Translations under genes and position numbers: made by a program
Notes under the pieces: generated by a model
Told to the model about the DNA's origin: nothing
What the model saw: only the letters and a program-made list of their open reading frames with translations
Database searches by the model: none
IMG/VR virus record: IMGVR_UViG_3300005613_000001
Location: 463,113-527,112 of that record
DNA length: 64,000 nucleotides
Reading direction: 5' to 3' (one strand)
Part shown: positions 929 through 55,164 of the stretch, one piece after another
Layout: every line of letters starts with the position of its first letter
Numbering within the stretch: position 1 is the first letter of the stretch

Positions 929-1952
929 ATCGACTCAAAATGTGTAGGAATTCCTGAGTAGAAGTTCCTTTGTAGTCCCTTTTGCTGTCCGCTTTAAATC
1001 GTGAATAATCCTTTTCACGCATGTCATACTTGCCGTATTTCTCCATTATCTTCTGGATTTCTTCAAATGATAGCAAACCTTCATTGTTGTAACTCAAGAA
1101 GATGTAGTTGAACTTGGCGGCGCTGATTATCTCATCTAGAGATTCGGGCACAGTTTTCTTGGAACAATATGTTGACCGCTCATATTCCCGCAACCCTGTC
1201 TTCCCTCTCGGTAAAAATTCATCATATTTTGCAATCGTATTGAGCAAATGATAGTTAGCACCGTAATCACGTTGGTTATATGGGGGGTCCAGGTAGAGAA
1301 TTCCGCCTTCAATATGATGAATTAACTCGTTGGCATCCTGGTTGTAGGCTATGTTGCTGCCATCGTTAATGGTAAATTCCGGCGCATGCAACTGCATTGT
1401 GCGTATCGCTGTCTTTTTGAACTTCTTTAGGAATGCCCCATAGACAGAAGCAGTGTTGGCAACGCAATCTGCCGCCTCTAATAATGAACATAAGTAGAAG
1501 TAATATTCGTTATCGTTGATTGCGCCGCTGGACAACCATCTTTCTATTTCCATTCTAATAGCATCAATCTTTTTGCCATTCTCATCACTGAAATACATCC
1601 TTTCCGATCCACCAACGCAATAGTTGTTGAAGATAAACCCCTCTACTCCTGGTAGTTCGTTTAAATATTTGAGGCGGTCTACATGTGGAAAATGTTGGTT
1701 GTTGCGGATATAGTTGCGGCAGAAGACATAACTGTAATACTCAATATCGTTAGCAATGACGGATTGAACGTGGGGTTTGAAAAATCTCCCTACGATTCCC
1801 GTACCTGCAAACAGGTCACAGAATACTTGTTGTTCTAAATCTGGTACAGTCTCTTTAATTGTCTGATGAATAAAATCTAAAAGTCTGTATTTAGAACCAA
1901 TATAGTTAATCTGACATTTCGGTTTCATTAAAATTAGCTGGCAACTTAACAT
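927..1952 (-). CDS. Dam/FokI-like (D12 class) N6-adenine DNA methyltransferase
   Basis: NYIGSK, DLFAGTG (SAM binding), ANDIEYYS, LYLDPPYN catalytic motif; true start may be MKPK near 1928. Confidence 0.9.
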   Translation of the reverse strand: MLSCQLILMKPKCQINYIGSKYRLLDFIHQTIKETVPDLEQQVFCDLFAGTGIVGRFFKPHVQSVIANDIEYYSYVFCRNYIRNNQHFPHVDRLKYLNELPGVEGFIFNNYCVGGSERMYFSDENGKKIDAIRMEIERWLSSGAINDNEYYFYLCSLLEAADCVANTASVYGAFLKKFKKTAIRTMQLHAPEFTINDGSNIAYNQDANELIHHIEGGILYLDPPYNQRDYGANYHLLNTIAKYDEFLPRGKTGLREYERSTYCSKKTVPESLDEIISAAKFNYIFLSYNNEGLLSFEEIQKIMEKYGKYDMREKDYSRFKADSKRDYKGTSTQEFLHILSR

Positions 1953-3057: not shown

Positions 3058-3946
3058 TTTCGATTAGAAGATTTGCCATTCGCACATAATCCATATTAAT
3101 ATCAAATCCATAGGCAGTCATTCCCAAGCTTTTAGCAGCGTATAACTCACCGCCAGTACCAGCGAAAGGAACAACAACAATCCCATCTTCAGGTGGTTTT
3201 GATGCCAAGAGCAGCTTAGTGCTTAATTCCAAAGGTTTTTGTGTGGGGTGGGTAACAATTTCATGTTTATCATGTTCTTTCTTTTTCATAGATGCGAAAA
3301 TATTATCACAATCTTTGCAATAAAAGAACCTTTCTACACGGCCCGCTCCACCGGCTAGGGCTGGAATTTTAAATACATCTCTTGGCAAAGCACCCTTATC
3401 ATGTGCTTTGTATATAGTTGTTTTCCCTTTTGAGGAAAACCGACCCTCTGTATCTTTTCTTTCTTTTCCTGCTGCGTTTTTCAAAAAGGTTGGGGTATAG
3501 GGTTCTCTTACATCATCTAAATTAAAGATTCGATTTTCGTCAGTCTTCCAAATTGCCAGCACAGATTCATGGCTTCGTTGCCAGAATTTATTTGTTGCTG
3601 AATTCTTATTAGTGTAATGCCAAACTAACCACCTACAGGGGTAGTCTATAGTGACAAATAAATGGGCGAGTATTTCAGAAAAGCCATAAATATAAGTTGT
3701 GCCTGAGGGTTTTAAAACCCGCATGGAATGGTGTATCCATTCTTGAGCCCATTCCACATATTCTTCAATCTCCACTTTGCATGTGTTATTCCCGAAATCC
3801 TTTCCAATGTTATACGGAGGATCAATTAAAACGATATCAGAATATTCTCTGGGTAGGTTTCTAAGACCCAAAGTGGCATCCAATAATGTCACTCTATTTG
3901 GAAAGAAATGATTTTTGACTATGCACATATTATTGAGGGCTCCCAA
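3035..3946 (-). CDS. Beta-class N4-C/N6-A DNA methyltransferase
   Basis: IDPPYNIG, HPTQKP, VVVPFAGTG; insert CKDC...H..H before HPTQKP. Confidence 0.9.
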   Translation of the reverse strand: MGALNNMCIVKNHFFPNRVTLLDATLGLRNLPREYSDIVLIDPPYNIGKDFGNNTCKVEIEEYVEWAQEWIHHSMRVLKPSGTTYIYGFSEILAHLFVTIDYPCRWLVWHYTNKNSATNKFWQRSHESVLAIWKTDENRIFNLDDVREPYTPTFLKNAAGKERKDTEGRFSSKGKTTIYKAHDKGALPRDVFKIPALAGGAGRVERFFYCKDCDNIFASMKKKEHDKHEIVTHPTQKPLELSTKLLLASKPPEDGIVVVPFAGTGGELYAAKSLGMTAYGFDINMDYVRMANLLIENGYPQKC

Positions 3947-5857: not shown

Positions 5858-5947
5858 ATAAAACTCGCTTTCTCCAGAACACTCTGGATGAGCGTGCAAC
5901 GATTTATTCTTTACTTATTTTATATAGAACAAACTGGTTAAATTATT

Positions 5948-6478
5948 ATGTCCCAATTAGAATACTTTAATGGTAAGATCGTTACGATACTTACAACTCC
6001 AATCAATCGCAACTTTAAAGAAGAGGCCGCAGCACTAGGAAAACCCAAGCTATTTCCTGCCAACCTCATGGATCACTTTGTCGGGCGTTTTGAGAGTTAT
6101 GATGCACTAGGGGTGATGTTGGCTCACCCTGATGCCGCTGTAGGTACAAAAGCCTACTATTTTTTGGATAAAATTGTAGGGATTGTTGAAGAACAGGAAT
6201 TAAATCCTGACGATCCCCAGGAAGCTGAATTAATTGAAAAATACAAGGCATTAAAGCAAACACCGCCTCAAGATAAGGTGTATTGCCCCAAAGGACATGC
6301 ACTAGATATACCACCTAATATCAAACCTGGATCACTTGTAGCTTGCCCTAAATGTCAAACTCAATTCCAATTGCCTGACGATAATCCGCCTCAAGATAAA
6401 CCCGCCCCAATAAATCAATCCAACTTTGTGGATATTGATGGGATGTCCAAACTAGCAGAAGAAGCTAAATCAAAATAA
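5948..6478 (+). CDS. Sm/Hfq-like fold candidate with C-terminal zinc ribbon
   Basis: GKIVTILT...GRFESYDALGVML...YYFLDKIVGIVE resembles Sm1/Sm2 spacing; CPKGH...CPKC. Confidence 0.45.
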   Translation: MSQLEYFNGKIVTILTTPINRNFKEEAAALGKPKLFPANLMDHFVGRFESYDALGVMLAHPDAAVGTKAYYFLDKIVGIVEEQELNPDDPQEAELIEKYKALKQTPPQDKVYCPKGHALDIPPNIKPGSLVACPKCQTQFQLPDDNPPQDKPAPINQSNFVDIDGMSKLAEEAKSK

Positions 6479-47777: not shown

Positions 47778-48238
47778 TTTTTACCCTTTTTACTATGTTT
47801 ATCTATTTCATCCATGAGCATTTGTTTGGCATCTTCCTCTGATTTGTTAGGGCCAAAATTGTAAGTGTTGTGCTGTTGTGCTGCTAAGTAACCCGGCATC
47901 GTATTCCGCTCTTTAAGCTTAATTCGTGTCATCAGGTCAGCAATCTTAATTTTTTTGTCTGCTGTGTCTGCTTTTAATTTCATTAAATTAACAATAGCTT
48001 CCTTTGCCGCAGCACTAGACTCACCATCATTTGTTACCATATCTATGAATGTCGCAAGCAACTCACTCGCCTCATCTCTGTCCTTTTCTATCTGATCTAA
48101 TACACTGTCATAAACGCCTAATAATTTATCGTCTGTGACTAGTGGATTTTCTTCGCCTTGAGCTTGTAATTCAGTAGATTTAGCCTTTTCCAATGCTACA
48201 CTTTCGTCTATAATTTCCGGTTCTTTGATTTCTTTCAT
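47774..48238 (-). CDS. Acidic helical hypothetical protein (start reassigned to MKEIKE)
   Basis: ATG at 48238 follows an AT-rich TATATAT element. Confidence 0.6.
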   Translation of the reverse strand: MKEIKEPEIIDESVALEKAKSTELQAQGEENPLVTDDKLLGVYDSVLDQIEKDRDEASELLATFIDMVTNDGESSAAAKEAIVNLMKLKADTADKKIKIADLMTRIKLKERNTMPGYLAAQQHNTYNFGPNKSEEDAKQMLMDEIDKHSKKGKK

Positions 48239-48296
48239 AACGTAAATATATATCAATATAGTACAGTATTCCGAAAGTAATTAGGTACATATAAGT

Positions 48297-48662
48297 ATGG
48301 CTGACTTTGAAAATCAAGTTTCTGAATCTATCCGATCCCTGTATGAATTAACCTCTCGTATCGATGAGAGAGTAAAGAATATGGGTAGTTCACTATCTAC
48401 AACGGATGGTAAAATAGAAAAAGATCGCCAAAGTCAAACTGAATTACTACAGAGAATAGCAGCGCTGGAAAGTAAAAATGGGGCGGGGGCTCAAATTAAA
48501 GAATTGGGCGACCGGCTGCGAAAACTAGAGTTGCAAGTTGGAGCCGTAGAAATTATATCTACCGGAAATCAAAGCAAATGGGCGCTGATGACCGATGCAT
48601 TTATGAAAATCGCTGTCATCCTCGCAGCATCCATCCTTATTTGGAAATTGGGTATAAATTAA
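48297..48662 (+). CDS. Coiled-coil protein with C-terminal TM anchor (XhlA/holin-like architecture)
   Basis: Heptads followed by FMKIAVILAASILIWKLG. Confidence 0.65.
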   Translation: MADFENQVSESIRSLYELTSRIDERVKNMGSSLSTTDGKIEKDRQSQTELLQRIAALESKNGAGAQIKELGDRLRKLELQVGAVEIISTGNQSKWALMTDAFMKIAVILAASILIWKLGIN

Positions 48663-48663
48663 T

Positions 48664-50283
48664 ATGAGAACATTTAAAGAATACGTTTCATTAAAAGAGG
48701 CGGCTGGAAAAGAGTCAAGCGGGGAGAATATTGTTGCCAAAAATACCACTATCTTAGGTAAAGATGAAGAAGGCGTTGAACCCTTCATGGTTGGCGCACA
48801 ATATAACCGGAAAAACCTTGGCACACTTGTTAAAGCATTTCTTGCCAGCCCCGAAGTAGAATTTGGTCCCAATATGCTTGATAGCAAAGCCACGACAAAC
48901 CCAGGGCAAAGCACAAGCGGTTTGACCAAAAACAAGCTAAAAAAGAAGACCTTGTATCTCGTTGGAGGGGCAGTAAGAGATCACATGTTGGGCCAAACCC
49001 CCAGTGATTATGACTTGGCTACCGATGCTACAATGGATGAAATCCGCCTCATTTTAAAACATGCTGGATTTGCAGAACTTAGACCACAAACTGCGGTGGA
49101 TAAGAAAAAAGAGGATAAAAAGCCTGATCCAAAATACGACAATCTCCCCGCTGCTTCTGATAATCCGAAAAAGTTCTATGTAAAAGGCACAGACATTAAA
49201 GGCACAGAATTCGTCATGGGAGCTAAAATTCATGGCGAAGAATTTGAAATTGCCACCTTTAGAAAAGATTCCAAAGGGGAAAGCGACGGTAGAACAACTC
49301 GTATGAGCTTCACACCCAAGCTTGAAGAGGACGCTGCAAGGCGTGATTTTACAGTCAATTCAATGTATATCCCACTAACAAGTGAGAATGGCCCAAATAA
49401 TAAATTAATTGATATTTATGGTGGGGTGAGAGACTTAAAACGCAAAAAAGTAAGATTCGTAGGCGATCCAAAAGAAAGATTAGAAGAAGATGAATTGCGG
49501 GCTCTTCGTTATGCTAGATTTGCCTCAATTTTTGAAGATTTGGACATGCCAGATGATATTGTAGATGCCATCGGACAAATGGCTGGACTTAAATCTCTAC
49601 AACCGTTCACTGATAAAGCAGGAAGGCAAAGAGATAGAAGAAAAAGAATTCGTGATGAATTCTTAAAAACAATGAAGAAGGCAAGTGTTAATCCTAAAAA
49701 ATACTTGATGGCGTTAAAAAGACTAGGATTAATACCAGCTATATTCCCTAATTTAAAAATTAGATTAGATGGGCCTGATGATATAAGCGATAAAAGAGAA
49801 AAACATTTAGCTATCGCCTGGTTGCTTAAAGACAATGATCCAGCTAGTGTTTATAGTATACTTACAGATGCACACTGGACTCAAGATGAAGCAAAGCGAA
49901 TTAGTTTTCTAATTAAATTCCTTCACTTCCACCCAGAAATTGATCCTGATAACCTCAACCAAATGTCTTCTGCTTTTATGAAAAGTGGCTTATCAAGTGG
50001 TTACCTCGGCGGAAAAGAAATGGGACAAAAATCACTACTTTCAACTTGGGCTCAAATGAATCCTGATAGATTCCCCGAAGGCTCTGTTGATGCTTTCTTG
50101 AAACACGTTAGCCACGGCCCAATTAAAGTATCCCATGAAGATCCAATGTTCGCTGATTTGTTCGTAGTTGATCCCTTCAGCGGCAAAAGGCGTGGAACAC
50201 CAGGCATTGCACAAAGACAAGCAGAATTGGCACATAAGAGATTTTTAGATATCTTTAAAAGCGGCCAAGCAAAAAATGTATGA
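48664..50283 (+). CDS. cca: Class II CCA-adding tRNA nucleotidyltransferase
   Basis: LYLVGGAVRD...DYDLAT, EIATFR, DAARRDFTVN, D..GG..DL, EDELRALRYARF; no HD domain; no poly(A)-polymerase G(R/K)(R/K)F signature. Confidence 0.9.
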   Translation: MRTFKEYVSLKEAAGKESSGENIVAKNTTILGKDEEGVEPFMVGAQYNRKNLGTLVKAFLASPEVEFGPNMLDSKATTNPGQSTSGLTKNKLKKKTLYLVGGAVRDHMLGQTPSDYDLATDATMDEIRLILKHAGFAELRPQTAVDKKKEDKKPDPKYDNLPAASDNPKKFYVKGTDIKGTEFVMGAKIHGEEFEIATFRKDSKGESDGRTTRMSFTPKLEEDAARRDFTVNSMYIPLTSENGPNNKLIDIYGGVRDLKRKKVRFVGDPKERLEEDELRALRYARFASIFEDLDMPDDIVDAIGQMAGLKSLQPFTDKAGRQRDRRKRIRDEFLKTMKKASVNPKKYLMALKRLGLIPAIFPNLKIRLDGPDDISDKREKHLAIAWLLKDNDPASVYSILTDAHWTQDEAKRISFLIKFLHFHPEIDPDNLNQMSSAFMKSGLSSGYLGGKEMGQKSLLSTWAQMNPDRFPEGSVDAFLKHVSHGPIKVSHEDPMFADLFVVDPFSGKRRGTPGIAQRQAELAHKRFLDIFKSGQAKNV

Positions 50284-51019
50284 ACTTAATGTCTTAACTT
50301 GTAGACCTGATTACTTTTATATCACCCTGGCATCTTTGTTGTCTTCCGATTGGACCGATGATATTAATATATGCCTGGGTGTGGCAAATGGAAGATATAT
50401 TACACAATACCTGCAAGAAGGTAGAATTAAATTAAGAAGATTACATACTAAAAAATCTTATGCTGAAATTAAAGAATGGTTGAAACAAAGACAAGCCTCT
50501 TGGAATTTCTCTAAAATATTAAGAGGCGCTAATAGAAATAAAAGGGGCATCTTTGTTCTTGAAGATGATATAATTCTAAATCCCGATTGGTTCGCACACG
50601 CACATGAAGTAATAAATGAAATAGAAAAAATATCAGATAAGTTCATTCTGTCCATATATAGCCCACATAGGAAAATGGAAGTGGGTGAAAACGGTTTCGC
50701 AGAATACCCAATTGATAGGTTCTTTGGCACGCAAGGGATGTATTACACTCCTTCTGTTGCAATTAAATTGGGGCGGTTCCTACGCGATGGTAATTACCAG
50801 CCAGGACATGATGTGATGATGCATGATTTTTGCAAAGATGAGAAAATAAAAGTGTATGTTCCAAACCGCATAACAATTCAACATATTGGTGAGAAATCAG
50901 CATTTCATGGCACCACGCTCAAAAAAGGACAAGGACCAGTACCCGGTTACTTGTGGCCGACAACTTACGAAATGCCACACTTCCACACTTCAAAGAAATA
51001 CAAGCATCAAAATCTCTAA
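50276..51019 (+). CDS. GT-A fold glycosyltransferase (GT25/GT2-like)
   Basis: IFVLEDDIIL, FGTQGMYY, D.MM, IQHIG. Confidence 0.7.
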   Translation: MYELNVLTCRPDYFYITLASLLSSDWTDDINICLGVANGRYITQYLQEGRIKLRRLHTKKSYAEIKEWLKQRQASWNFSKILRGANRNKRGIFVLEDDIILNPDWFAHAHEVINEIEKISDKFILSIYSPHRKMEVGENGFAEYPIDRFFGTQGMYYTPSVAIKLGRFLRDGNYQPGHDVMMHDFCKDEKIKVYVPNRITIQHIGEKSAFHGTTLKKGQGPVPGYLWPTTYEMPHFHTSKKYKHQNL

Positions 51020-51022
51020 TCG

Positions 51023-51063
51023 AAAAGAAAGACCCCTTATCGTTGTTTCCAACAATAAGGGGT
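51023..51063 (-). terminator. Intrinsic terminator ending the ncRNA transcript
   Basis: ACCCCTTATTGTTG-GAAA-CAACGATAAGGGGT then CTTTCTTTT on the minus strand. Confidence 0.88.
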
Positions 51064-52045
51064 ATTCCCAGCAAGCACGTTCAGGATTCAGCACTCGTTA
51101 GAATAACTAAACCCTCCATTGAGTTCCATCACCTTTTGCCAGTCTCCGCAGGTAGTGCTTACCTTGAGGCTTTTAACCTCACCGCACGCAATTGGTATAA
51201 CCTACGGCGTGATAGTTGTGGGTAGTTTACCTGTTACTTGAACTTTCCGTGCTTCTGATGATTAAATTCCAACATGCTGCTGTTACCACAGTTTAGCTGG
51301 GCCTAATCTCAGGGTGTCACTTGAGCCCTTATAACGGCTCTACTCCTCAACTTCCCATTTTGTTTCGTGGTTGGATTCCACGTCGTTTCTGAATGCCATT
51401 AGGTTGGCATTAGGCTCAACGTTGCTATACAGCCCGACGACTGTGCCCGATATTCTCGGGGGATTTGCTCACAAGCAACTGGCTGCTTGTGGTCTATCCC
51501 GCAACGTGCTAGGGTGTCAGTAAATCCTCAGTTTATCGGCACCAAGCGATCACTTGGCTCCGTATCCGACTGAAGATGCTGATGTTGGGCTGACTTTGTT
51601 CCTTGTCACATTTCTGCGCACAAGGTTTATGTGCCAATCCCACCCTCTAGACGCTTACCACGTTAAATTCGCCTGACTGACAGTTCAGACAAAACCTAAT
51701 ATGGTTGGAAGAGAGACCTACAAATTAATGCTGGGTAGCTGTCAACAACCCGTCTCTAATCCACGCCTCGCATCGAAGCCTGCCTGTGAGTATCCGGTTT
51801 GAATTCTCAGACTTTGCCGTTTCGGCGCTGTCTGTTTCATCATTCCGTGACTTCAAGCTAAAAGGCTCTTTAGAATACCCGTCCGAAGACAAGCTCCCTT
51901 GGATACCTCCGCCTGAGAGTCCCCACCCCTTTTTATGCGGATTGGGGTTTTGTACCCGTGGTCCTATTTTTCAAGAGCCATCGGGTTCCACAGGACTCCT
52001 TGAGGCCACTTACACTTTACAGTATAAGTGCGGAACTCAGTACCA
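51064..52045 (-). ncRNA. ~1-kb highly structured non-coding RNA (GOLLD/ROOL-class candidate)
   Basis: No credible minus-strand ORF; dense hairpins with GNRA/UUCG loops; long-range TGAGTTCC (52039-52032)/GGAACTCA (51127-51120) closing helix; boxA upstream, terminator downstream. Confidence 0.8.
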
Positions 52046-52048
52046 AAT

Positions 52049-52060
52049 TGTCAAAGATCA
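52049..52060 (-). promoter_or_regulatory. boxA antitermination element
   Basis: TGATCTTTGACA vs rrn boxA TGCTCTTTAACA. Confidence 0.75.
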
Positions 52061-52063
52061 AAG

Positions 52064-52235
52064 TGAACAGAGCAGGGCTTGCACCTGCATTTCCTGGTTT
52101 ATCTAGTAGTTAAACTAAATTCCCAAGCGTTCTACAAAATTGATACACCTGTTGGGGTGTCCTCTAATCTCAACTTACCGGAGGCAGTGATAAAATTAGA
52201 GGCGAGATCAACTCCGTTAATTGAACTATCTGTTC
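52064..52235 (-). ncRNA. tRNA-like RNA B (172 nt) with 90-nt D-loop domain and extended anticodon arm
   Basis: GAACAGA/TCTGTTC acceptor, U8A9, GTTC/GAAC D-stem, CTTGG/CCAGG stem, AAAT, GCAGG-TGCAAGC-CCTGC T-arm, A73. Confidence 0.8.
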
Positions 52236-52236
52236 A

Positions 52237-52368
52237 GGCGAACAGGGCAGGATTCTCACCTGCATTTCCGGTAGCGGTGCTTTGGACAACGCTTCCAGCG
52301 TTTTGCACTATTCACTTGACACTGCCGGATGGCCGAGCAACTAATTAGTGCAGTTAAACTACCTGTTC
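52237..52368 (-). ncRNA. tRNA-like RNA A (130 nt plus encoded CC) with 52-nt D-loop domain and extended anticodon arm
   Basis: GAACAGG/CCTGTTC acceptor, U8A9, GTTT/AAAC D-stem, CTGG/CCGG stem, AAAT, GCAGG-TGAGAAT-CCTGC T-arm, G73-C-C. Confidence 0.8.
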
Positions 52369-52380
52369 TTGTGTTTCGTT

Positions 52381-52512
52381 CCCAGCATTTTAACAAATCA
52401 TTTGGCTGTGTCAAGCCCAATTTTTTGTCCGGTCTGCTGAGTAACCTTTGCCTTCTTCTCTGTTCTGTGCCCAGCATTTTAACAAATCATTTGGCTGTGT
52501 CAAGCCCAATTT
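52381..52512 (-). promoter_or_regulatory. Tandem duplicated sigma70 promoters (43-bp exact direct repeat, 89-bp period)
   Basis: Each copy TTGACA-N16-TAAAAT with extended -10 TG; -35 at 52503-52498 and 52414-52409. Confidence 0.88.
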
Positions 52513-52529
52513 GTTCGGACTGCTGGTGA

Positions 52530-52835
52530 CCTTTTGCTAAATTTTTCTCAATTCACTTATCAACCGTAGTTGATGCATTGTGATTGCGAATGGCTTTAGC
52601 TGCCTGGGTTCCCTCCACATGATTGACAACTTTTCCGAAGAGGTTGTCACAGTTTTTTTTCAGGGCTCCTCTTGTACTCCGTTGCCACACGGGCGGGTTC
52701 CCAAATCTCTCAAGGTGGCTTTATGATAACGACTTCTCCTCTTCTGTCAAGGGCAGAAGTTTGGGGATCGCTGCCTCTCTCCCTAGAGGCAGCAATTCCC
52801 CAGGAGCGTTAAAGGCTTCCATCGCCACCGATTGT
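52530..52835 (-). ncRNA. Second structured ncRNA candidate (~300 nt)
   Basis: GGTGGC/GCCACC enclosing helix, 16-bp GGGGA..CCTCT/AGAGG..TCCCC hairpin, cUUCGg and cUACGg loops; preceded by boxA. Confidence 0.6.
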
Positions 52836-52836
52836 G

Positions 52837-52864
52837 TTTTCAAAGAACGTTTGCCCCGAAGGAC
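52837..52864 (-). promoter_or_regulatory. boxB-like hairpin plus boxA
   Basis: GTCC-TTCG-GGGC hairpin followed by CGTTCTTTGAAAA. Confidence 0.7.
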
Positions 52865-52908
52865 GAGAGCCAAGTATAGCGGTTTGCCAAATCCATGCAA
52901 CCCCAATT

Positions 52909-55164
52909 TCACCGCTTGGAGGACTTTTTCTTGGAGAAGCGTAGCTTTTTAAATTTTCTACGCATATTGTCTTTTTTGTCTATCTCACCAGGAGGGTCGG
53001 AGTCACCGCATTGTCCCCTAAATGCCCCGCTTCCATCACCACTAGAAGAAAATGTATTCAGATCACCGTCTTCCCAAAAGCGGTTTTCTCCAAGACTACC
53101 GAGGAACTCACTATGATGTTTCCGAATATCAGCAGCATCTTTGGAACTAATTATACCTAATTTCTGTTGAAAGTCTATCCAATCACTAAGGGCTTCGCCT
53201 CCCCATGATATTCTTTCAAACCCGCTTAGTTTATTAAGAGGTTTAAACCGTACTGCTTTATCAATATGGTCTAACTTTTCTTCTCCTGGGTAGTTAATTT
53301 GGAAGAATTTTTTAGCCCTACGAATATTTGGTACAAATGCCTGGCCGTAAGATTTCCTGTCAGGAAGCTCATCTGATTCCATTGCATCGTGAAGATGCTT
53401 AAGCCTTCTTAAGAATTCGGACATATACACTTTCATGTCGGCATCTTGCATTGCTTGATCGTAAAACCTTTTAAGTATTTGACGATTATTCAAGGATGGT
53501 TTTTCTTTTGTTAATTTTCGCCAAGAATAAACTAAGTGTATTGCATGTGTTGTCTGTCTTATTGCTCTTTTTTCCCAATCTTCACGCTTTGAATCTACTG
53601 CCGCCTCTATTACTTCAAGCGTTTTCCTTAGAGTTGTTTCCAAAGAATGTTTTGTCATTTCCTCTGTGGTGCCTCTAATTGAAGAGCGATTTTTATAACC
53701 GGATGATCTACCATAGGAAACTATACTGTGAGCGCCTCTGTCTTCATCCCAATAATCAGCTTCATCTTTTAGATTGTTAAACCAATCATTGAATTCCCCG
53801 GTTAATTCAACCGAATCACTTATATCAAAATCTTGAGGAAGTCCTTTCCGTTTCCTCCACTCCGCCTTTAGGAAACTTTTCCACAAATTCATATCCCAAA
53901 GATATTCATTAGAAACTTTATATTGTCTTCTAAATTGATCTGCTAATTGGGCATATTTCAAACTAGGTCGTCCTTCAACTTGTTTATGTGTAGGATTTTC
54001 AAAGTTTGGAACTGTTGCAACGTGTTCCCAAGTACCAGGCGTAAGAAAAACAGCTTGCGTTGGCTCAGACGCATAAATAGTATCCGTCCCTATATCAGAG
54101 ATCCCAGAGACTCCCATTTTTCTTAGAATAGCTGACCACGTAATCCACGGGCGAGTATCACTAAGTTTGTCTGACCATCGTTTTGCCACCTGATAGAGAA
54201 CACCTATATCTGAATTGAAGCTATTTGATTTCACCCATTCTTTTGTTTTCTCAAAATCAACCTCAGGATGTTTTTCAGCAAATTTTTTCAACACATCCTC
54301 AAAAGGAATTCTACCCTGTTTACCCCTTTTGATTAATCTTTTTACATGCGTCCAATATTCTTTAAGTGTCTTGTTTATAAAGCGTATTGATTTTTCGCCA
54401 AGATTTTCTTCAATATCTAAATACTCACTGTTTTTCAAAATATCCCAAAAACCATCAACAAGCTCGTCCCAATTCACCTTTTTTATATCTCTAATAGAAC
54501 CAGACAAAGTAAGACTTTTATAAAGTGACTGCTGTAATGAATCTAGTGCTCTTGCTATCACTTGATACCATTGAACTTCATCCCTGGGTTCTCCAAAAAA
54601 CTCCTCAAGGTCTTCATTTTCTATTTTCCACACTTTCTGTAAGTGCTTAGAGATAACCATTCTATACTGATTTAACAAATACAAAGGATCTCGCCCGGCA
54701 TTGATAGACGAAGTTTGCATCATCTTGCCTTTATCATTCTTCTTCTTTGTTATTAAGACTTGAATCCAAGGCTTAGCAGAGGCAAACAAATCATCTGGGT
54801 TATCTCTCATCATTTTGATTGCATAACGAATTGGATATGCATAAAGACCTATAGGCGTCTCTGTCCATGTTGTCTTGGGATTAATGCCTAATTTTTCAAG
54901 ATCAGTGAAACTAACCCATATTTCCTTGGGATGTACACCTTTAGTTTTTAAAGCTTTTTTAATAAACTCTAAATGTGTTATTCTTTCATCATAACGATAT
55001 GTCCGCCCCGTTTTTGGATTGATAAGAGGGTGTTTCACATGGGCGGGAACTATCTTCTTTTGACCTTCTAAGATAGACTCAATGAGCATCTCCATCTCCG
55101 TGTTGTGGAGATCAAGTAAAATGTCCTCACATTCGGAGGTTATTAAATACTCAGAGAACTTCAT
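52909..55164 (-). CDS. Large probable virion internal protein (start reassigned to MKFSEYL)
   Basis: ATG at 55164 preceded by TATAAATA; capsid-targeting-like start; KLGINP..TP.G.Y.YP and GVSGISD.G...EPTQAVF motifs. Confidence 0.7.
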   Translation of the reverse strand: MKFSEYLITSECEDILLDLHNTEMEMLIESILEGQKKIVPAHVKHPLINPKTGRTYRYDERITHLEFIKKALKTKGVHPKEIWVSFTDLEKLGINPKTTWTETPIGLYAYPIRYAIKMMRDNPDDLFASAKPWIQVLITKKKNDKGKMMQTSSINAGRDPLYLLNQYRMVISKHLQKVWKIENEDLEEFFGEPRDEVQWYQVIARALDSLQQSLYKSLTLSGSIRDIKKVNWDELVDGFWDILKNSEYLDIEENLGEKSIRFINKTLKEYWTHVKRLIKRGKQGRIPFEDVLKKFAEKHPEVDFEKTKEWVKSNSFNSDIGVLYQVAKRWSDKLSDTRPWITWSAILRKMGVSGISDIGTDTIYASEPTQAVFLTPGTWEHVATVPNFENPTHKQVEGRPSLKYAQLADQFRRQYKVSNEYLWDMNLWKSFLKAEWRKRKGLPQDFDISDSVELTGEFNDWFNNLKDEADYWDEDRGAHSIVSYGRSSGYKNRSSIRGTTEEMTKHSLETTLRKTLEVIEAAVDSKREDWEKRAIRQTTHAIHLVYSWRKLTKEKPSLNNRQILKRFYDQAMQDADMKVYMSEFLRRLKHLHDAMESDELPDRKSYGQAFVPNIRRAKKFFQINYPGEEKLDHIDKAVRFKPLNKLSGFERISWGGEALSDWIDFQQKLGIISSKDAADIRKHHSEFLGSLGENRFWEDGDLNTFSSSGDGSGAFRGQCGDSDPPGEIDKKDNMRRKFKKLRFSKKKSSKR

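What the first reader, a model, noticed from the sequence alone, without database searches (positions are those of the whole stretch)
52064..52368. Two tandem tRNA-shaped RNAs with giant structured D-loops and extended anticodon arms
Seen: on the minus strand, 52368-52239 (130 nt) and 52235-52064 (172 nt) each fold by hand into a full cloverleaf scaffold. Each has a perfect 7-bp acceptor, U8A9, a 4-bp D-stem, G26, an anticodon-position stem, a 4-nt variable region AAAT and a 5-bp T-stem with a 7-nt loop. The copies covary: pair 7:66 is G-C vs A-U and D-stem 13:22 is U-A vs C-G. The D-loop is replaced by a 52-nt hairpin domain in A (TGCACTA/TAGTGCA plus inner hairpin) and a 90-nt three-way junction in B (11-bp, 12-bp and ACACC/GGTGT helices). 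The anticodon loop is replaced by a 23-25-nt extension. T-loops are UGAGAAU and UGCAAGC: U54-A58 is kept but G55 replaces psi55, consistent with loss of the D-loop GG. A ends G-C-C and B starts 1 nt later; B ends A-C. Established: RNase P, RNase Z and CCA enzymes recognise the acceptor/T-arm top half. Inference: this may be an undescribed class of phage tRNA mimics. Possible roles are decoys for anticodon nucleases, aminoacylated non-ribosomal RNAs, or processing punctuation for the downstream giant RNA. I do not recognise this architecture from tmRNA, Y RNA or tRNA-Sec.
Basis: partly seen in the sequence, partly recalled or inferred. Interest (0 to 1): 0.92.

Follow-up and report, generated by a model that had tools for sequence, protein, structure and literature searches.

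The report
Two expanded tRNA-like phage RNAs
Two tandem non-coding RNAs in a 527-kb phage keep a tRNA's acceptor arm, T arm and core but carry large extra helices where the D loop and anticodon loop should be. A related phage preserves both folds through compensatory mutations, so they are real tRNA mimics of unknown role, and T4's unexplained 'species 1' RNA is the nearest precedent.

Summary
On the minus strand, A (52368-52239, 130 nt) and B (52235-52064, 172 nt) fold as minimum-energy cloverleaves (z = -5.4 each). Each has a 7-bp acceptor, U8A9, a 4-bp D stem, G26, an AAAU variable loop and a 5-bp T stem with a 7-nt U-G-N-R-A loop. The D loops are 52 and 90 nt, and the anticodon-position arms are long, with no 7-nt loop.

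ARAGORN and Rfam 15 find nothing. A second phage (L204, about 75% nucleotide identity) has orthologues A' and B'. These keep 99-100% of pairs through 11 double compensatory changes, and their indels break any reading frame.

A and B lie between tandem consensus promoters and a conserved structured RNA of about 1 kb that ends at a strong terminator. A third phage (L208) has that large RNA without A or B.

Best reading: non-decoding tRNA mimics, probably excised and CCA-matured by tRNA enzymes. What they do after that is unknown.

They are not unprecedented. T4 rnaC has the same kind of architecture, and G55 T loops mark staphylococcal non-ribosomal tRNAGly. Similar G55 tRNA-like genes occur in other phage tRNA islands and, in many copies, in Streptomyces.

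Verdict: a new variant of a known kind, and well worth follow-up.

The parts
52470..52512 (-). Promoter P1 inside the first copy of an exact 43-nt direct repeat. The -35 TTGACA is at 52503-52498 and the extended -10 TGTTAAAAT ends at 52476.
   Evidence: Promoter scan gives 11/12 with the TG extension. Repeat copies start at 52512 and 52423.
52381..52423 (-). Promoter P2, the second copy of the repeat. The -35 is at 52414-52409 and the -10 at 52392-52387. The predicted start lies about 12 nt upstream of A.
   Evidence: L204 conserves a single copy of this promoter.
52239..52368 (-). tRNA-like RNA A, 130 nt. Acceptor 52368-52362 / 52246-52240; U8A9 52361-52360; D stem 52359-52356 / 52303-52300; 52-nt D-loop hairpin domain 52355-52304; G26 52299; extended anticodon-position arm 52298-52268; variable loop AAAU 52267-52264; T arm 52263-52247 (loop UGAGAAU); discriminator G 52239.
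   Evidence: Sequence; MFE fold, z -5.4; orthologue A' in L204 with 5 double compensatory changes and 100% of cells paired.
52236..52238 (-). 3-nt spacer CCU between A's discriminator and B's first base. It encodes two of the three CCA nucleotides.
   Evidence: L204 keeps G-CCU and then has 26 extra nt before B'.
52064..52235 (-). tRNA-like RNA B, 172 nt. Acceptor 52235-52229 / 52071-52065; UA 52228-52227; D stem 52226-52223 / 52132-52129; 90-nt three-way-junction domain 52222-52133; G26 52128; extended anticodon-position arm 52127-52093; variable loop AAAU 52092-52089; T arm 52088-52072 (loop UGCAAGC); discriminator A 52064.
   Evidence: Sequence; MFE fold, z -5.4; orthologue B' in L204 with 6 double compensatory changes and 99.2% of cells paired. 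A 25-nt stretch containing the ACACC/GGUGU hairpin is identical in both phages.
51064..52063 (-). Co-transcribed non-coding region of about 1 kb, a large structured RNA. It has no minus-strand ORF of 60 aa or more and is conserved in two other phages.
   Evidence: ORF list; 75% identity to L204 over the whole locus, and 63% to L208 over the 3' 490 nt; invariant blocks of up to 28 nt; 39 pairs with double changes in the 3' 600 nt; no Rfam match, including GOLLD and ROOL.
51022..51063 (-). Intrinsic terminator of the RNA operon: a 14-bp stem followed by a T run.
   Evidence: It is conserved with compensatory changes in L204 and L208 (columns 608-639).
48664..50283 (+). Gene for a 539-aa class-II tRNA nucleotidyltransferase homologue (CCA-adding / poly(A) polymerase family). 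It is a neighbour and a possible maturation enzyme. It is not shown to be part of the system.
   Evidence: Pfam PF01743 at 3e-28; PHROG 2244 at 1e-42; NCBIfam hits are all far below their cut-offs; homologues occur with and without the RNA locus.

Best explanation
A and B are genuine, independently folding, non-decoding tRNA mimics encoded by a huge myovirus-type phage.

Shown:
- Each keeps the tRNA 'top half': a 7-bp acceptor stacked on a 5-bp T stem with a T-loop-type U1...A5 loop.
- Each keeps the nucleotides of the tRNA core: U8, A14, A15 with U48, A21, G26 and a 4-bp D stem.
- The G18-G19 part of the D loop is replaced by a projecting helical domain.
- The anticodon stem-loop is replaced by an arm about twice the normal length that ends in a 5-6-nt loop.
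- T-loop position 55 is G.
- These features, and the helices of the inserts, are kept in a second phage through compensatory substitutions.

Inferred mechanism:
- The two strong tandem sigma-70-type promoters drive one transcript of about 1.35 kb: leader, A, CCU, B, the roughly 1-kb RNA, terminator.
- Host RNase P cuts at G1 of A and of B.
- RNase Z or 3' exonucleases trim the trailers. Cutting at B's 5' end leaves A ending in ...G-C-C-U.
- A CCA-adding enzyme, of the host or the phage's own homologue 1.8 kb away, completes the 3' end.
- This releases two abundant, stable tRNA-like RNAs and the 5' end of the large RNA.

Least certain step:
- Without an anticodon loop, and with a G55 T loop like that of tRNAs kept out of translation, A and B cannot serve the ribosome.
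- My working guess is that they present a genuine acceptor, CCA end and T arm to a factor that binds the tRNA top half. They would titrate or recruit it during infection. Candidates are a tRNA-end-directed host toxin or defence enzyme, or a processing enzyme.
- The inserted helices would provide extra specific contacts.
For: Fold and significance.

Orthologous locus L204, same gene order, CCA enzyme 77% identical:
- A' and B' fold on their own into the same junctions, z -6.9 and -3.7.
- A/A' has 5 pairs changed on both sides, including acceptor 4:69 C-G to U-A, acceptor 5:68 A-U to G-C, and T stem 50:64 C-G to U-A. All cells are paired, against 34-46% when partners are slid.
- B/B' has 6 pairs changed on both sides: 2 in the anticodon-position stem, 1 in the T stem and 3 in the D-domain helices. 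99.2% of cells are paired, against 34-42% when slid.
- Extra apical hairpin material of 13 and 24 nt sits only at helix tips.

Not protein-coding: indels of 13, 26, 2, 2, 1, 1, 1, 1 and 2 nt between the two phages.

Strand: there are 3 and 8 G-U pairs in A and B, which would be C-A mismatches on the plus strand. Promoters and terminator have the same orientation.

Selection on more than the RNase P/Z recognition part:
- B is about 85% identical to B', against 75% for the locus as a whole.
- A 25-nt stretch with the ACACC/GGUGU hairpin and its CCAACA loop is invariant.
- Acceptor pairs 1-3 are invariant in all four RNAs and the discriminator is G in three of them, while pairs 4, 5 and 7 change.

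Module character: L208 has the large RNA directly after two promoters, without A or B.

Specific likeness to other G55 tRNA-like genes: a covariance model built from A, A', B and B' finds no further copy in the window. It ranks G55-T-loop tRNA-like elements of other phages at 33-43 bits, including elements that lack the T-arm pattern I used for fishing (L072:785-914 at 40.9 bits, L068:6985-7106 at 35.5 bits). Of the dozens of canonical tRNAs in the same loci only one scored, at 25 bits.

Precedents:
- T4 rnaD-rnaC are tandem stable RNAs in the tRNA region whose roles are unknown (PMC3014915).
- rnaC folds into a tRNA-like four-way junction with long arms in the D and anticodon positions.
- Non-proteogenic staphylococcal tRNAGly genes have TGC/TGT in place of TTC in the T loop (PMC7826273).
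Against: - There are no expression or end-mapping data, so processing and CCA addition are inferred only from the shape.
- Only two independent phages carry A and B, so covariation rests on two-sequence comparisons. With two rows the column-shuffle control is weak (11/500 and 14/500).
- The elbow that RNase P and other enzymes contact (the D-loop/T-loop pair; PMC4810234) is remodelled, so recognition could fail.
- Position -1 is A (for A) and U (for B), and the trailers differ. Nothing in the sequence proves cleavage.
- The CCA-enzyme homologue also occurs in relatives that lack the RNA locus.
- No candidate partner protein was found among the neighbouring ORFs.
- The decoy or recruiter role is a guess.
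Confidence: 0.55

Rival explanations
1. A and B are not released. They are tRNA-shaped 5' domains of one giant RNA of about 1.35 kb, comparable to tRNAs embedded in the variable linker of GOLLD RNA, and they act as part of that RNA's architecture or assembly.
For: A and B share one promoter pair and one terminator with the large RNA, and no terminator lies between them. The arrangement is kept in L204. The large RNA's 5' part varies between phages, and L208 lacks A and B, as in the 'less conserved 5' region' of GOLLD. GOLLD and ROOL are phage RNAs near tRNA islands, and tRNAs sometimes sit in the GOLLD linker (PMC12286853).
Against: A perfect 7-bp acceptor with a discriminator, and G-CCU placed directly before the next G1, is the layout of a tRNA dimer precursor. 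A 26-nt spacer is tolerated between A' and B', which argues against a fixed spatial arrangement. The large RNA exists without A and B. Rfam's GOLLD and ROOL models do not match.
Confidence: 0.2
2. A and B are aminoacylated and serve as amino-acid donors outside the ribosome, for example for cell-wall, lipid, natural-product or DNA-hypermodification chemistry. This is how staphylococcal non-proteogenic tRNAGly works.
For: The G55 T loop is the hallmark of non-proteogenic tRNAGly (PMC7826273). Acceptor pairs 1-3 are invariant in all four RNAs and the discriminator is G in three, while lower pairs vary, which is the usual place for synthetase identity elements. A partial CCA is encoded and a CCA-enzyme gene is nearby. 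A phage enzyme that uses aminoacyl-tRNA for DNA hypermodification has been reported (PMC13219725, abstract).
Against: There is no anticodon loop, and most synthetases need the anticodon. From my own knowledge, G1-C72/A2-U71/A3-U70 with G73 matches none of the anticodon-independent identity sets: there is no G3-U70 for Ala, no long variable arm for Ser, and no A73 with the Leu-type D loop. No Fem-type, L/F-transferase-type or synthetase gene was found among the neighbours I scanned.
Confidence: 0.1
3. A and B are only processing signals. Their sole job is to recruit RNase P and RNase Z so that the large RNA gets a defined 5' end, and the excised pieces are discarded.
For: B ends 1 nt before the conserved start of the large RNA. 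The motif UUUGAUCUUUGAC... follows B in the window and in L204, and follows the promoters in L208.
Against: One minimal acceptor/T-arm hairpin would be enough, yet there are two elements of 130-190 nt. Their inserted helices keep pairing through compensatory changes, and one loop is invariant. L208 makes the same RNA by direct initiation.
Confidence: 0.08
4. A and B are ordinary tRNA genes interrupted by introns and become decoding tRNAs after splicing.
For: The cloverleaf frame is complete and the extra material sits in loops.
Against: There is no Rfam group I or group II intron hit, even at E<=10. The inserts of 52 and 90 nt are far smaller than bacterial group I introns (my knowledge), and they lie in the D loop. 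Removing the 23-25-nt extension leaves no 7-nt anticodon loop. The inserts differ in length between orthologues only at their tips. ARAGORN, which allows introns, finds nothing.
Confidence: 0.02
5. The folds are chance, or the region is protein-coding (ORFs 52079-52348 on the plus strand and 52256-52477 on the minus strand).
For: Short ORFs of 73-89 aa overlap the region.
Against: Fold z-scores are -5.4. Indels that break the reading frame separate the window from L204. Compensatory pair changes are present. Shuffled windows give 0.07 hits.
Confidence: 0.01

Closest known systems
Bacteriophage T4 stable RNAs rnaC (species 1, 139 nt) and rnaD (species 2, 119 nt)
   Same: Both are phage-encoded, arranged in tandem, belong to a tRNA-type transcription unit, measure 120-170 nt and have no known function (PMC3014915). 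rnaC folds (z -4.6) into a four-way junction with a 7-position acceptor, a hairpin of about 60 nt in the D position, a 10-bp arm with a 6-nt loop in the anticodon position, and a T arm. That is the same kind of expansion as in A. From memory, not tested here: species 1 is cut out of the dimeric p2Sp1 precursor by RNase P.
   Different: There is no sequence similarity, and the model built from A and B does not hit T4. The rnaC T loop is canonical UUCGAAU, not U-G-N-R-A. Its acceptor has two U-U mismatches, its junction linkers differ (no U8-A9, and 8 nt between the D and anticodon arms), and rnaD does not fold like a tRNA. T4 has no large RNA downstream. Homology is not shown.
Non-proteogenic tRNAGly of Staphylococcus (peptidoglycan bridge synthesis)
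   Same: The T loop has U54-G55 (TGC/TGT in place of TTC) and no pseudouridine 55. These tRNAs are kept away from translation (PMC7826273).
   Different: They are normal-sized tRNAs with a UCC anticodon loop, an ordinary D loop and the glycine identity set. A and B have none of these.
GOLLD and ROOL RNAs of phages, with neighbouring or embedded tRNAs
   Same: A very large structured phage RNA is physically linked to tRNA-type elements, and its function is unknown (PMC12286853).
   Different: The large RNA here matches neither Rfam model. The linked elements here are non-decoding mimics, not normal tRNAs.
Pseudo-tRNAs and tRNA-like regulators of bacteria: B. cereus tRNA-Other, the tRNA-like domain of YrlA, the tRNA-like domain of tmRNA
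   Same: These are tRNA-shaped RNAs that do not decode (tRNA-Other: PMC3399842, abstract; YrlA and tmRNA: my knowledge).
   Different: tRNA-Other has normal size. In YrlA the RNA ends lie at the anticodon-side stem and the acceptor is closed. tmRNA has G3-U70, a tag reading frame and pseudoknots, and ARAGORN finds none here.
Uncatalogued G55-T-loop tRNA-like genes found here (phage tRNA islands L006, L068, L072, L081, L003/L007; the 70-nt multicopy Streptomyces element)
   Same: They share the variable loop plus T arm GGAAAU-GCAGG-UGNRANN-CCUGC or close variants, U8, A14-A15 and U48. Their anticodon-position arms are shortened, lengthened or replaced. Some carry large inserts.
   Different: Most were retrieved through the T-arm sequence itself, so that similarity is partly built in. 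In L068 and L072 the insert is in the anticodon arm, not the D loop. Only L003/L007 has a D-loop hairpin as A does. None of them has B's three-way junction.

Membership tests
Canonical tRNA (Rfam RF00005) | Detected by tRNA finders or by the covariance model | tested here: not met
   ARAGORN finds 0 genes in the window and in L204. Rfam gives no tRNA hit at gathering score or at E<=10.
Canonical tRNA (Rfam RF00005) | 7-bp acceptor, U8, 5-bp T stem with G53-C61, short variable loop | tested here: met
Canonical tRNA (Rfam RF00005) | D loop of 7-11 nt with G18-G19, and T loop U54-U55-C56 | tested here: not met
   The D loops are 52 and 90 nt of helices. The T loops are UGAGAAU and UGCAAGC.
Canonical tRNA (Rfam RF00005) | 5-bp anticodon stem with a 7-nt loop (U33 and an anticodon) | tested here: not met
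   The arms are 11-12 bp with 5- and 6-nt end loops.
Intron-containing tRNA | A recognisable intron (group I/II, or bulge-helix-bulge) whose removal restores a normal tRNA | tested here: not met
   No intron family at E<=10. Removing the inserts leaves no anticodon loop.
tmRNA | tRNA-like domain with G3-U70, a tag reading frame and pseudoknots | tested here: not met
   ARAGORN finds no tmRNA. Pair 3:70 is A-U.
T4 rnaC/rnaD-type phage stable RNAs | Tandem stable RNAs of 120-170 nt in a phage tRNA-type operon, with a tRNA-like four-way junction and long D- and anticodon-position arms | tested here: met
   Architecture compared. Stability is not testable here.
T4 rnaC/rnaD-type phage stable RNAs | Sequence or profile homology to rnaC/rnaD | tested here: not met
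   blastn gives nothing below E = 0.8. Model R1 gives no hit in T4 locus L213.
T4 rnaC/rnaD-type phage stable RNAs | 5' end made by RNase P from a multimeric precursor | not testable with these tools
   Needs RNA end mapping or enzyme assays.
Non-proteogenic tRNAGly | U54-G55 T loop | tested here: met
   PMC7826273.
Non-proteogenic tRNAGly | Glycine identity (G1-C72, C2-G71, G3-C70, U73, a UCC anticodon) and normal tRNA size | tested here: not met
   The acceptor is G-C, A-U, A-U, the discriminator is G or A, and there is no anticodon. The identity set is from my own knowledge.
GOLLD / ROOL with linked tRNAs | The large RNA matches the GOLLD or ROOL covariance model | tested here: not met
   No Rfam hit at E<=10 over 48000-54000.
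G55-T-loop tRNA-like set (defined here only) | Scores with a model built from A, A', B and B' well above canonical tRNAs in the same loci | tested here: met
   33-43 bits for L072, L068, L081, L040 and the Streptomyces elements, including elements without the fishing pattern. The best canonical tRNA scores 25 bits. Whether this reflects common descent or convergence is inconclusive.

The most novel reading that the evidence does not exclude
A and B show the tRNA fold used as a chassis. The acceptor/T-arm top half and the core are kept, while the D-loop elbow and the anticodon end are rebuilt into new helical domains. On this reading they belong to a wider, uncatalogued superfamily of G55-T-loop, non-decoding tRNA-like genes in phage tRNA islands, with a multicopy tRNAGly-like branch in Streptomyces. 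Their dedicated job would be non-ribosomal: for example an abundant decoy for host factors that attack or sense tRNA 3' ends, or a partner of the co-transcribed RNA of about 1 kb. This would also hint at what T4's species 1 RNA does.
Probability: 0.3. Interest if true: 0.85.

Novelty: new variant of a known kind. Interest (0 to 1): 0.68.

Why it matters
Phage tRNA-like stable RNAs have been known since T4's species 1 and 2 RNAs, but no function has been assigned to them. A and B offer a second system with comparative support, and it has several useful features:
- clear structural rules: a tRNA core, a G55 T loop and helices in place of both functional loops;
- strong promoters;
- a linked large RNA;
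- relatives in other phages' tRNA islands.

If these RNAs are tRNA-end decoys or scaffolds, they would add an RNA-based layer to phage-host conflict over tRNAs.

The work also has a practical lesson. Standard tRNA finders and Rfam miss a whole set of tRNA-shaped genes, including a highly conserved multicopy element in Streptomyces.

Tried and rejected
- **Standard detectors.** ARAGORN and Rfam (gathering score and E<=10) give nothing.
- **DNA similarity.** blastn of the 2-kb locus against 50,697 phage records gives no match.
- **Self hits.** The exact pattern of T arm plus acceptor, and the protein-seeded scan with the CCA enzyme in IMG/VR, returned only the window's own contig.
- **804-aa upstream ORF.** It has almost no homologues, and the one large contig fetched (L009) is not syntenic.
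- **Looser T-arm pattern.** It gave many loci. About 20 are coding-region or chance hits, for example L004, L016, L022, L026 and L028, and I discarded them.
- **Gene context of the Streptomyces elements.** No recurrent neighbour was found.
- **Literature.** Searches on the motif sequence and on 'tRNA-like Streptomyces' found no description.
- **Conserved blocks.** Scans with conserved blocks of the large RNA and of B found only the window phage and the L204/L214 phage. L215-L217 are chance matches.
- **Other CCA-enzyme relatives.** L206, L209, L211 and L212 lack the RNA locus.
- **The 247-aa ORF next to the terminator.** It is conserved only in L204 and not in L208, so it is not linked to the RNA.
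- **Loop complementarity.** A 6-nt complementarity between B's anticodon-arm loop and the large RNA's most conserved block is no more than chance, and I did not pursue it.
Full report
**Where the window comes from**

The window is part of IMGVR_UViG_3300005613_000001, a 527,112-bp viral contig. Its genes include a myovirus baseplate module: baseplate wedge, Phage_base_V and Tail_P2_I. The finding lies in a 1.9-kb stretch between a plus-strand gene ending at 51019 and a minus-strand gene ending at 52909. That stretch has no minus-strand ORF of 60 aa or more apart from one 73-aa ORF (52256-52477) that overlaps A and the promoters.

**The observation**

- Both elements have a perfect 7-bp acceptor, U8-A9, a 4-bp D stem, G26, a stem in the anticodon position, the variable loop AAAU and a 5-bp T stem with a 7-nt loop.
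- The D loops are 52 nt (A) and 90 nt (B).
- The anticodon loop is replaced by 23 nt (A) and 25 nt (B).
- A is followed by CCU, and B starts immediately after that.

Unconstrained folding gives exactly these four-way junctions as the minimum-energy and centroid structures. Both have z = -5.4, and no shuffle out of 200 folds as well. A purpose-written scan for the T arm, acceptor and U8 finds only these elements in both strands of the window, against 0.07 expected from shuffles. ARAGORN and Rfam 15 are silent.

**Transcription unit**

Two promoters with 11 of 12 consensus positions and a TG extension sit in an exact 43-nt direct repeat, 12 and 101 nt upstream of A. Downstream of B there is about 1 kb of non-coding sequence, ending in a 14-bp-stem terminator at 51063-51032. 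The eleven G-U pairs in A and B, together with the promoter and terminator orientation, fix the minus strand as the RNA strand.

**Comparative evidence**

The neighbouring 539-aa protein belongs to the class-II tRNA nucleotidyltransferase / poly(A) polymerase family. I used its relatives as anchors to find related loci.

- *L204.* This is a 22-kb metagenome contig whose enzyme is 77% identical, with the same gene order. It carries the whole RNA locus at about 75% nucleotide identity. L214 is the same phage from another sample.
- *Orthologues.* A' (138 nt) and B' (191 nt) fold on their own into the same junctions.
- *A versus A'.* Five pairs change on both sides and stay paired: acceptor 4:69 and 5:68, T stem 50:64, one pair in the D-domain hairpin and one in the long anticodon-position arm. 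All cells are paired, against 34-46% when the 3' partners are slid.
- *B versus B'.* Six pairs change on both sides: two in the anticodon-position stem, one in the T stem and three in the D-domain helices. 99.2% of cells are paired, against 34-42% when slid.
- *Length differences.* Extra nucleotides (13 and 24 nt) lie at hairpin tips, and 26 extra nt separate A' from B'. The many indels that are not multiples of three exclude a conserved reading frame.
- *Conservation.* B is more conserved (about 85%) than the locus as a whole. A 25-nt stretch containing the ACACC/GGUGU hairpin and its CCAACA loop is identical in both phages.

With only two independent phages the statistics are thin, but the pattern is what a structured RNA under selection shows.

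**What the anatomy says**

In all four RNAs the nucleotides that build the tRNA core are present:

- U8;
- A14-A15 directly after the D stem;
- an unpaired A before the 3' strand of the D stem. The position opposite it varies, U or C, so it is best read as A21;
- G26;
- U48 as the last variable-loop base, which allows an A15-U48 Levitt pair.

The insert therefore replaces precisely the G18-G19 segment of the D loop, the partner of T-loop positions 55 and 56 at the elbow. The T loop keeps U54 and A58 but has G55. This fits the general T-loop motif (my knowledge). It also removes the pseudouridine-55 site, as in the staphylococcal tRNAGly species that are reserved for cell-wall synthesis (PMC7826273).

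Acceptor pairs 1-3 are invariant in all four RNAs and the discriminator is G in three of them, while pairs 4, 5 and 7 change. This suggests that something reads the end of the acceptor helix. The anticodon-position arms are about twice the normal length and end in loops of 5-6 nt that are not conserved in A (CCAAA versus GAUAA). These RNAs cannot decode, and they are poor candidates for anticodon-nuclease decoys.

**A and B are an add-on module**

L208, whose enzyme is 52% identical, has two tandem promoters followed directly by the large RNA. That RNA starts at the motif which follows B in the window, and L208 has no A or B. Four further relatives of the enzyme have neither the RNA locus nor tRNAs in their flanks.

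Three things follow. The large RNA is an independent unit, conserved in three phages. A and B are a cargo inserted between promoter and large RNA in one sub-lineage. The nucleotidyltransferase gene is not dedicated to them. This weakens the 'punctuation only' idea and leaves two live readings:

- they are excised as tRNA mimics (favoured, 0.55);
- they stay as tRNA-shaped 5' domains of a giant RNA (0.2).

The layout resembles a tRNA dimer precursor: acceptor, discriminator, CCU, then the next G1. The 26-nt spacer tolerated in L204 also points towards excision. Neither observation is proof.

**Relatives elsewhere**

The 23-nt string shared by A and B (variable loop plus T arm) recurs far more often than chance would allow.

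Phage examples:

- a 78-nt element with a 6-bp stem and 6-nt loop, lying after a non-coding stretch of about 580 nt between tRNA-His and tRNA-Gly in phages of about 105-125 kb (L006 and its relatives);
- pairs of 122-132-nt elements with a normal D arm and a conserved 60-80-nt insert in the anticodon arm, embedded in tRNA arrays (L068, L072, L081);
- a GC-rich phage element with a hairpin inserted in the D loop, as in A, but with a weak 5-bp acceptor (L003/L007);
- ordinary-sized phage tRNAs called by ARAGORN (Trp-CCA, Ile-GAU) that carry G55 loops.

A covariance model built from A, A', B and B' finds no third copy in the window. It scores these G55 elements at 33-43 bits, including some that lack the fishing pattern. 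Of the dozens of canonical tRNAs in the same loci only one scored, at 25 bits, and T4 gives no hit. This supports a specific likeness. Because most loci were ascertained through the T arm, I cannot decide between common descent and convergence.

**Comparison with what is known**

- *T4 rnaD and rnaC.* The nearest precedent is the tandem pair rnaD-rnaC in the T4 tRNA region, whose biological roles remain unknown (PMC3014915). In my fold rnaC is a tRNA-like four-way junction with a hairpin of about 60 nt in the D position, a 10-bp arm with a 6-nt loop in the anticodon position, and a canonical T arm. That is the same type of expansion as in A. There is no sequence or profile similarity, however. 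Rfam has no model for rnaC or rnaD either, so the lack of an Rfam match for A and B says little about novelty.
- *GOLLD and ROOL.* These show that very large phage RNAs sit next to, or even contain, tRNAs (PMC12286853). The large RNA here is not one of them by Rfam.
- *Other families.* tmRNA, intron-containing tRNA and canonical tRNA each fail on defining features (see the membership table).

**Verdict**

The structure is real and conserved. The class is not wholly new, but D-loop replacement by a hairpin or a three-way junction, combined with a G55 T loop and linkage to a new large RNA, is a new variant. Function is unknown. My committed guess is an abundant tRNA-top-half mimic, processed and CCA-tailed by tRNA enzymes, that engages a factor binding tRNA ends. 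The processing step is inferred and the decoy step is speculative.

Noticed in passing
window 52063-51023 (minus strand); L204:13414-12378 (-); L208:13340-12505 (-): A non-coding RNA of about 0.85-1.03 kb is conserved in three huge-phage contigs. It has invariant blocks of up to 28 nt (AGCUAAACUGUGGUAACAGCAGCAUGUU), 39 pairs with double changes in the 3' 600 nt, tandem consensus promoters and a strong terminator. It does not match GOLLD, ROOL or any other Rfam 15 family. It is a candidate new large structured phage RNA.
   Followed up: partly
window 52512-52470 and 52423-52381 (minus strand): An exact 43-nt direct repeat duplicates the whole promoter (TTGACA, 16 nt, TG-TAAAAT). L204 has one copy. 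L208 has two promoters of different sequence.
   Followed up: partly
window 48664-50283 (+): A 539-aa tRNA nucleotidyltransferase / poly(A) polymerase homologue with an extension of about 90-180 aa N-terminal to the head-domain match. It lacks the PF12627 RNA-binding domain that its more distant relatives have. Its homologues sit on contigs of 586-669 kb, which are probably other huge phages.
   Followed up: partly
L027:4313-4382 (+), L153:2641-2710, 3829-3898 and 5896-5965 (+), L085 (two copies), and more than 120 further Streptomyces loci: A 69-70-nt tRNA-like gene, nearly invariant across Streptomyces species and present in several copies per genome. Each copy has its own promoter, a leader hairpin of variable sequence, and (checked in one copy, L153) a terminator. 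The acceptor G1-C72/C2-G71/G3-C70 with U73 and a loop containing UCC or CC is the tRNAGly identity set (my knowledge). The anticodon-position stem has 6 bp with a 5-nt loop, or 6 bp with a 4-nt loop, and it shows compensatory changes. The T loop is UGCAAGG. In two variants the D loop and T loop change together. Rfam's tRNA model does not detect it even at E<=10, there is no recurrent neighbouring gene, and I found no description in the literature searched.
   Followed up: partly
L068:7106-6985 (-) and 6802-6672 (-); L072:785-914 (+) and 1033-1162 (+); L081:6888-6767 (-) and 6584-6455 (-): Pairs of 122-132-nt tRNA-like genes inside phage tRNA arrays. They have a normal D arm, a G55 T loop and a 60-80-nt insert in the anticodon arm that shares conserved motifs (such as CUUGCUC...GAGCCG and AUCCA...UGGGUUA). 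Neither ARAGORN nor Rfam calls them.
   Followed up: partly
L006:5238-5893 (+); the same region in L008, L035, L047 and L048, and its 3' part in L045: In phages of about 105-125 kb, a non-coding stretch of about 580 nt (a 531-nt stretch covering most of it and the tRNA-like element folds with z -4.2) lies between tRNA-His and tRNA-Gly. It is followed by a 78-nt G55 tRNA-like element with an encoded ACCA end. This is a second case of a large RNA next to a G55 tRNA mimic. The copies are 95-100% identical, so no covariation test was possible.
   Followed up: partly
L003:5879-5986 (+); L007 (same element): A GC-rich phage element with GUUUAAC, a hairpin inserted in the D loop, an extended anticodon-position arm and B's exact T arm, but only a 5-bp acceptor. 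It may be an A-like mimic or a fragment such as an attachment site.
   Followed up: no
L005:7809-7879 (+), the same as L042: A mini-cloverleaf of about 70-100 nt with an 11-bp closing stem, two small hairpins and a G55 T-arm hairpin. It lies between a promoter and a terminator, upstream of a gene, in a riboswitch-like arrangement. Rfam has no match.
   Followed up: no
L047:10371-10444, L040:3763-3832, L046:2709-2782: Normal-sized phage tRNAs called by ARAGORN (Trp-CCA twice, Ile-GAU once) that carry U-G-N-R-A T loops. G55 therefore also occurs in phage tRNAs that have an anticodon loop.
   Followed up: no
L213:1909-2047 (-), T4 rnaC: T4 species 1 RNA folds (z -4.6) as a tRNA-like four-way junction with long arms in the D and anticodon positions. 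Rfam 15 has no family for rnaC or rnaD.
   Followed up: partly
window 50462-50486 (minus strand): A weak match to a CRISPR repeat model (RF01355, 26.8 bits against a gathering score of 39, E = 0.22), found once and inside the 247-aa ORF. Probably chance.
   Followed up: no
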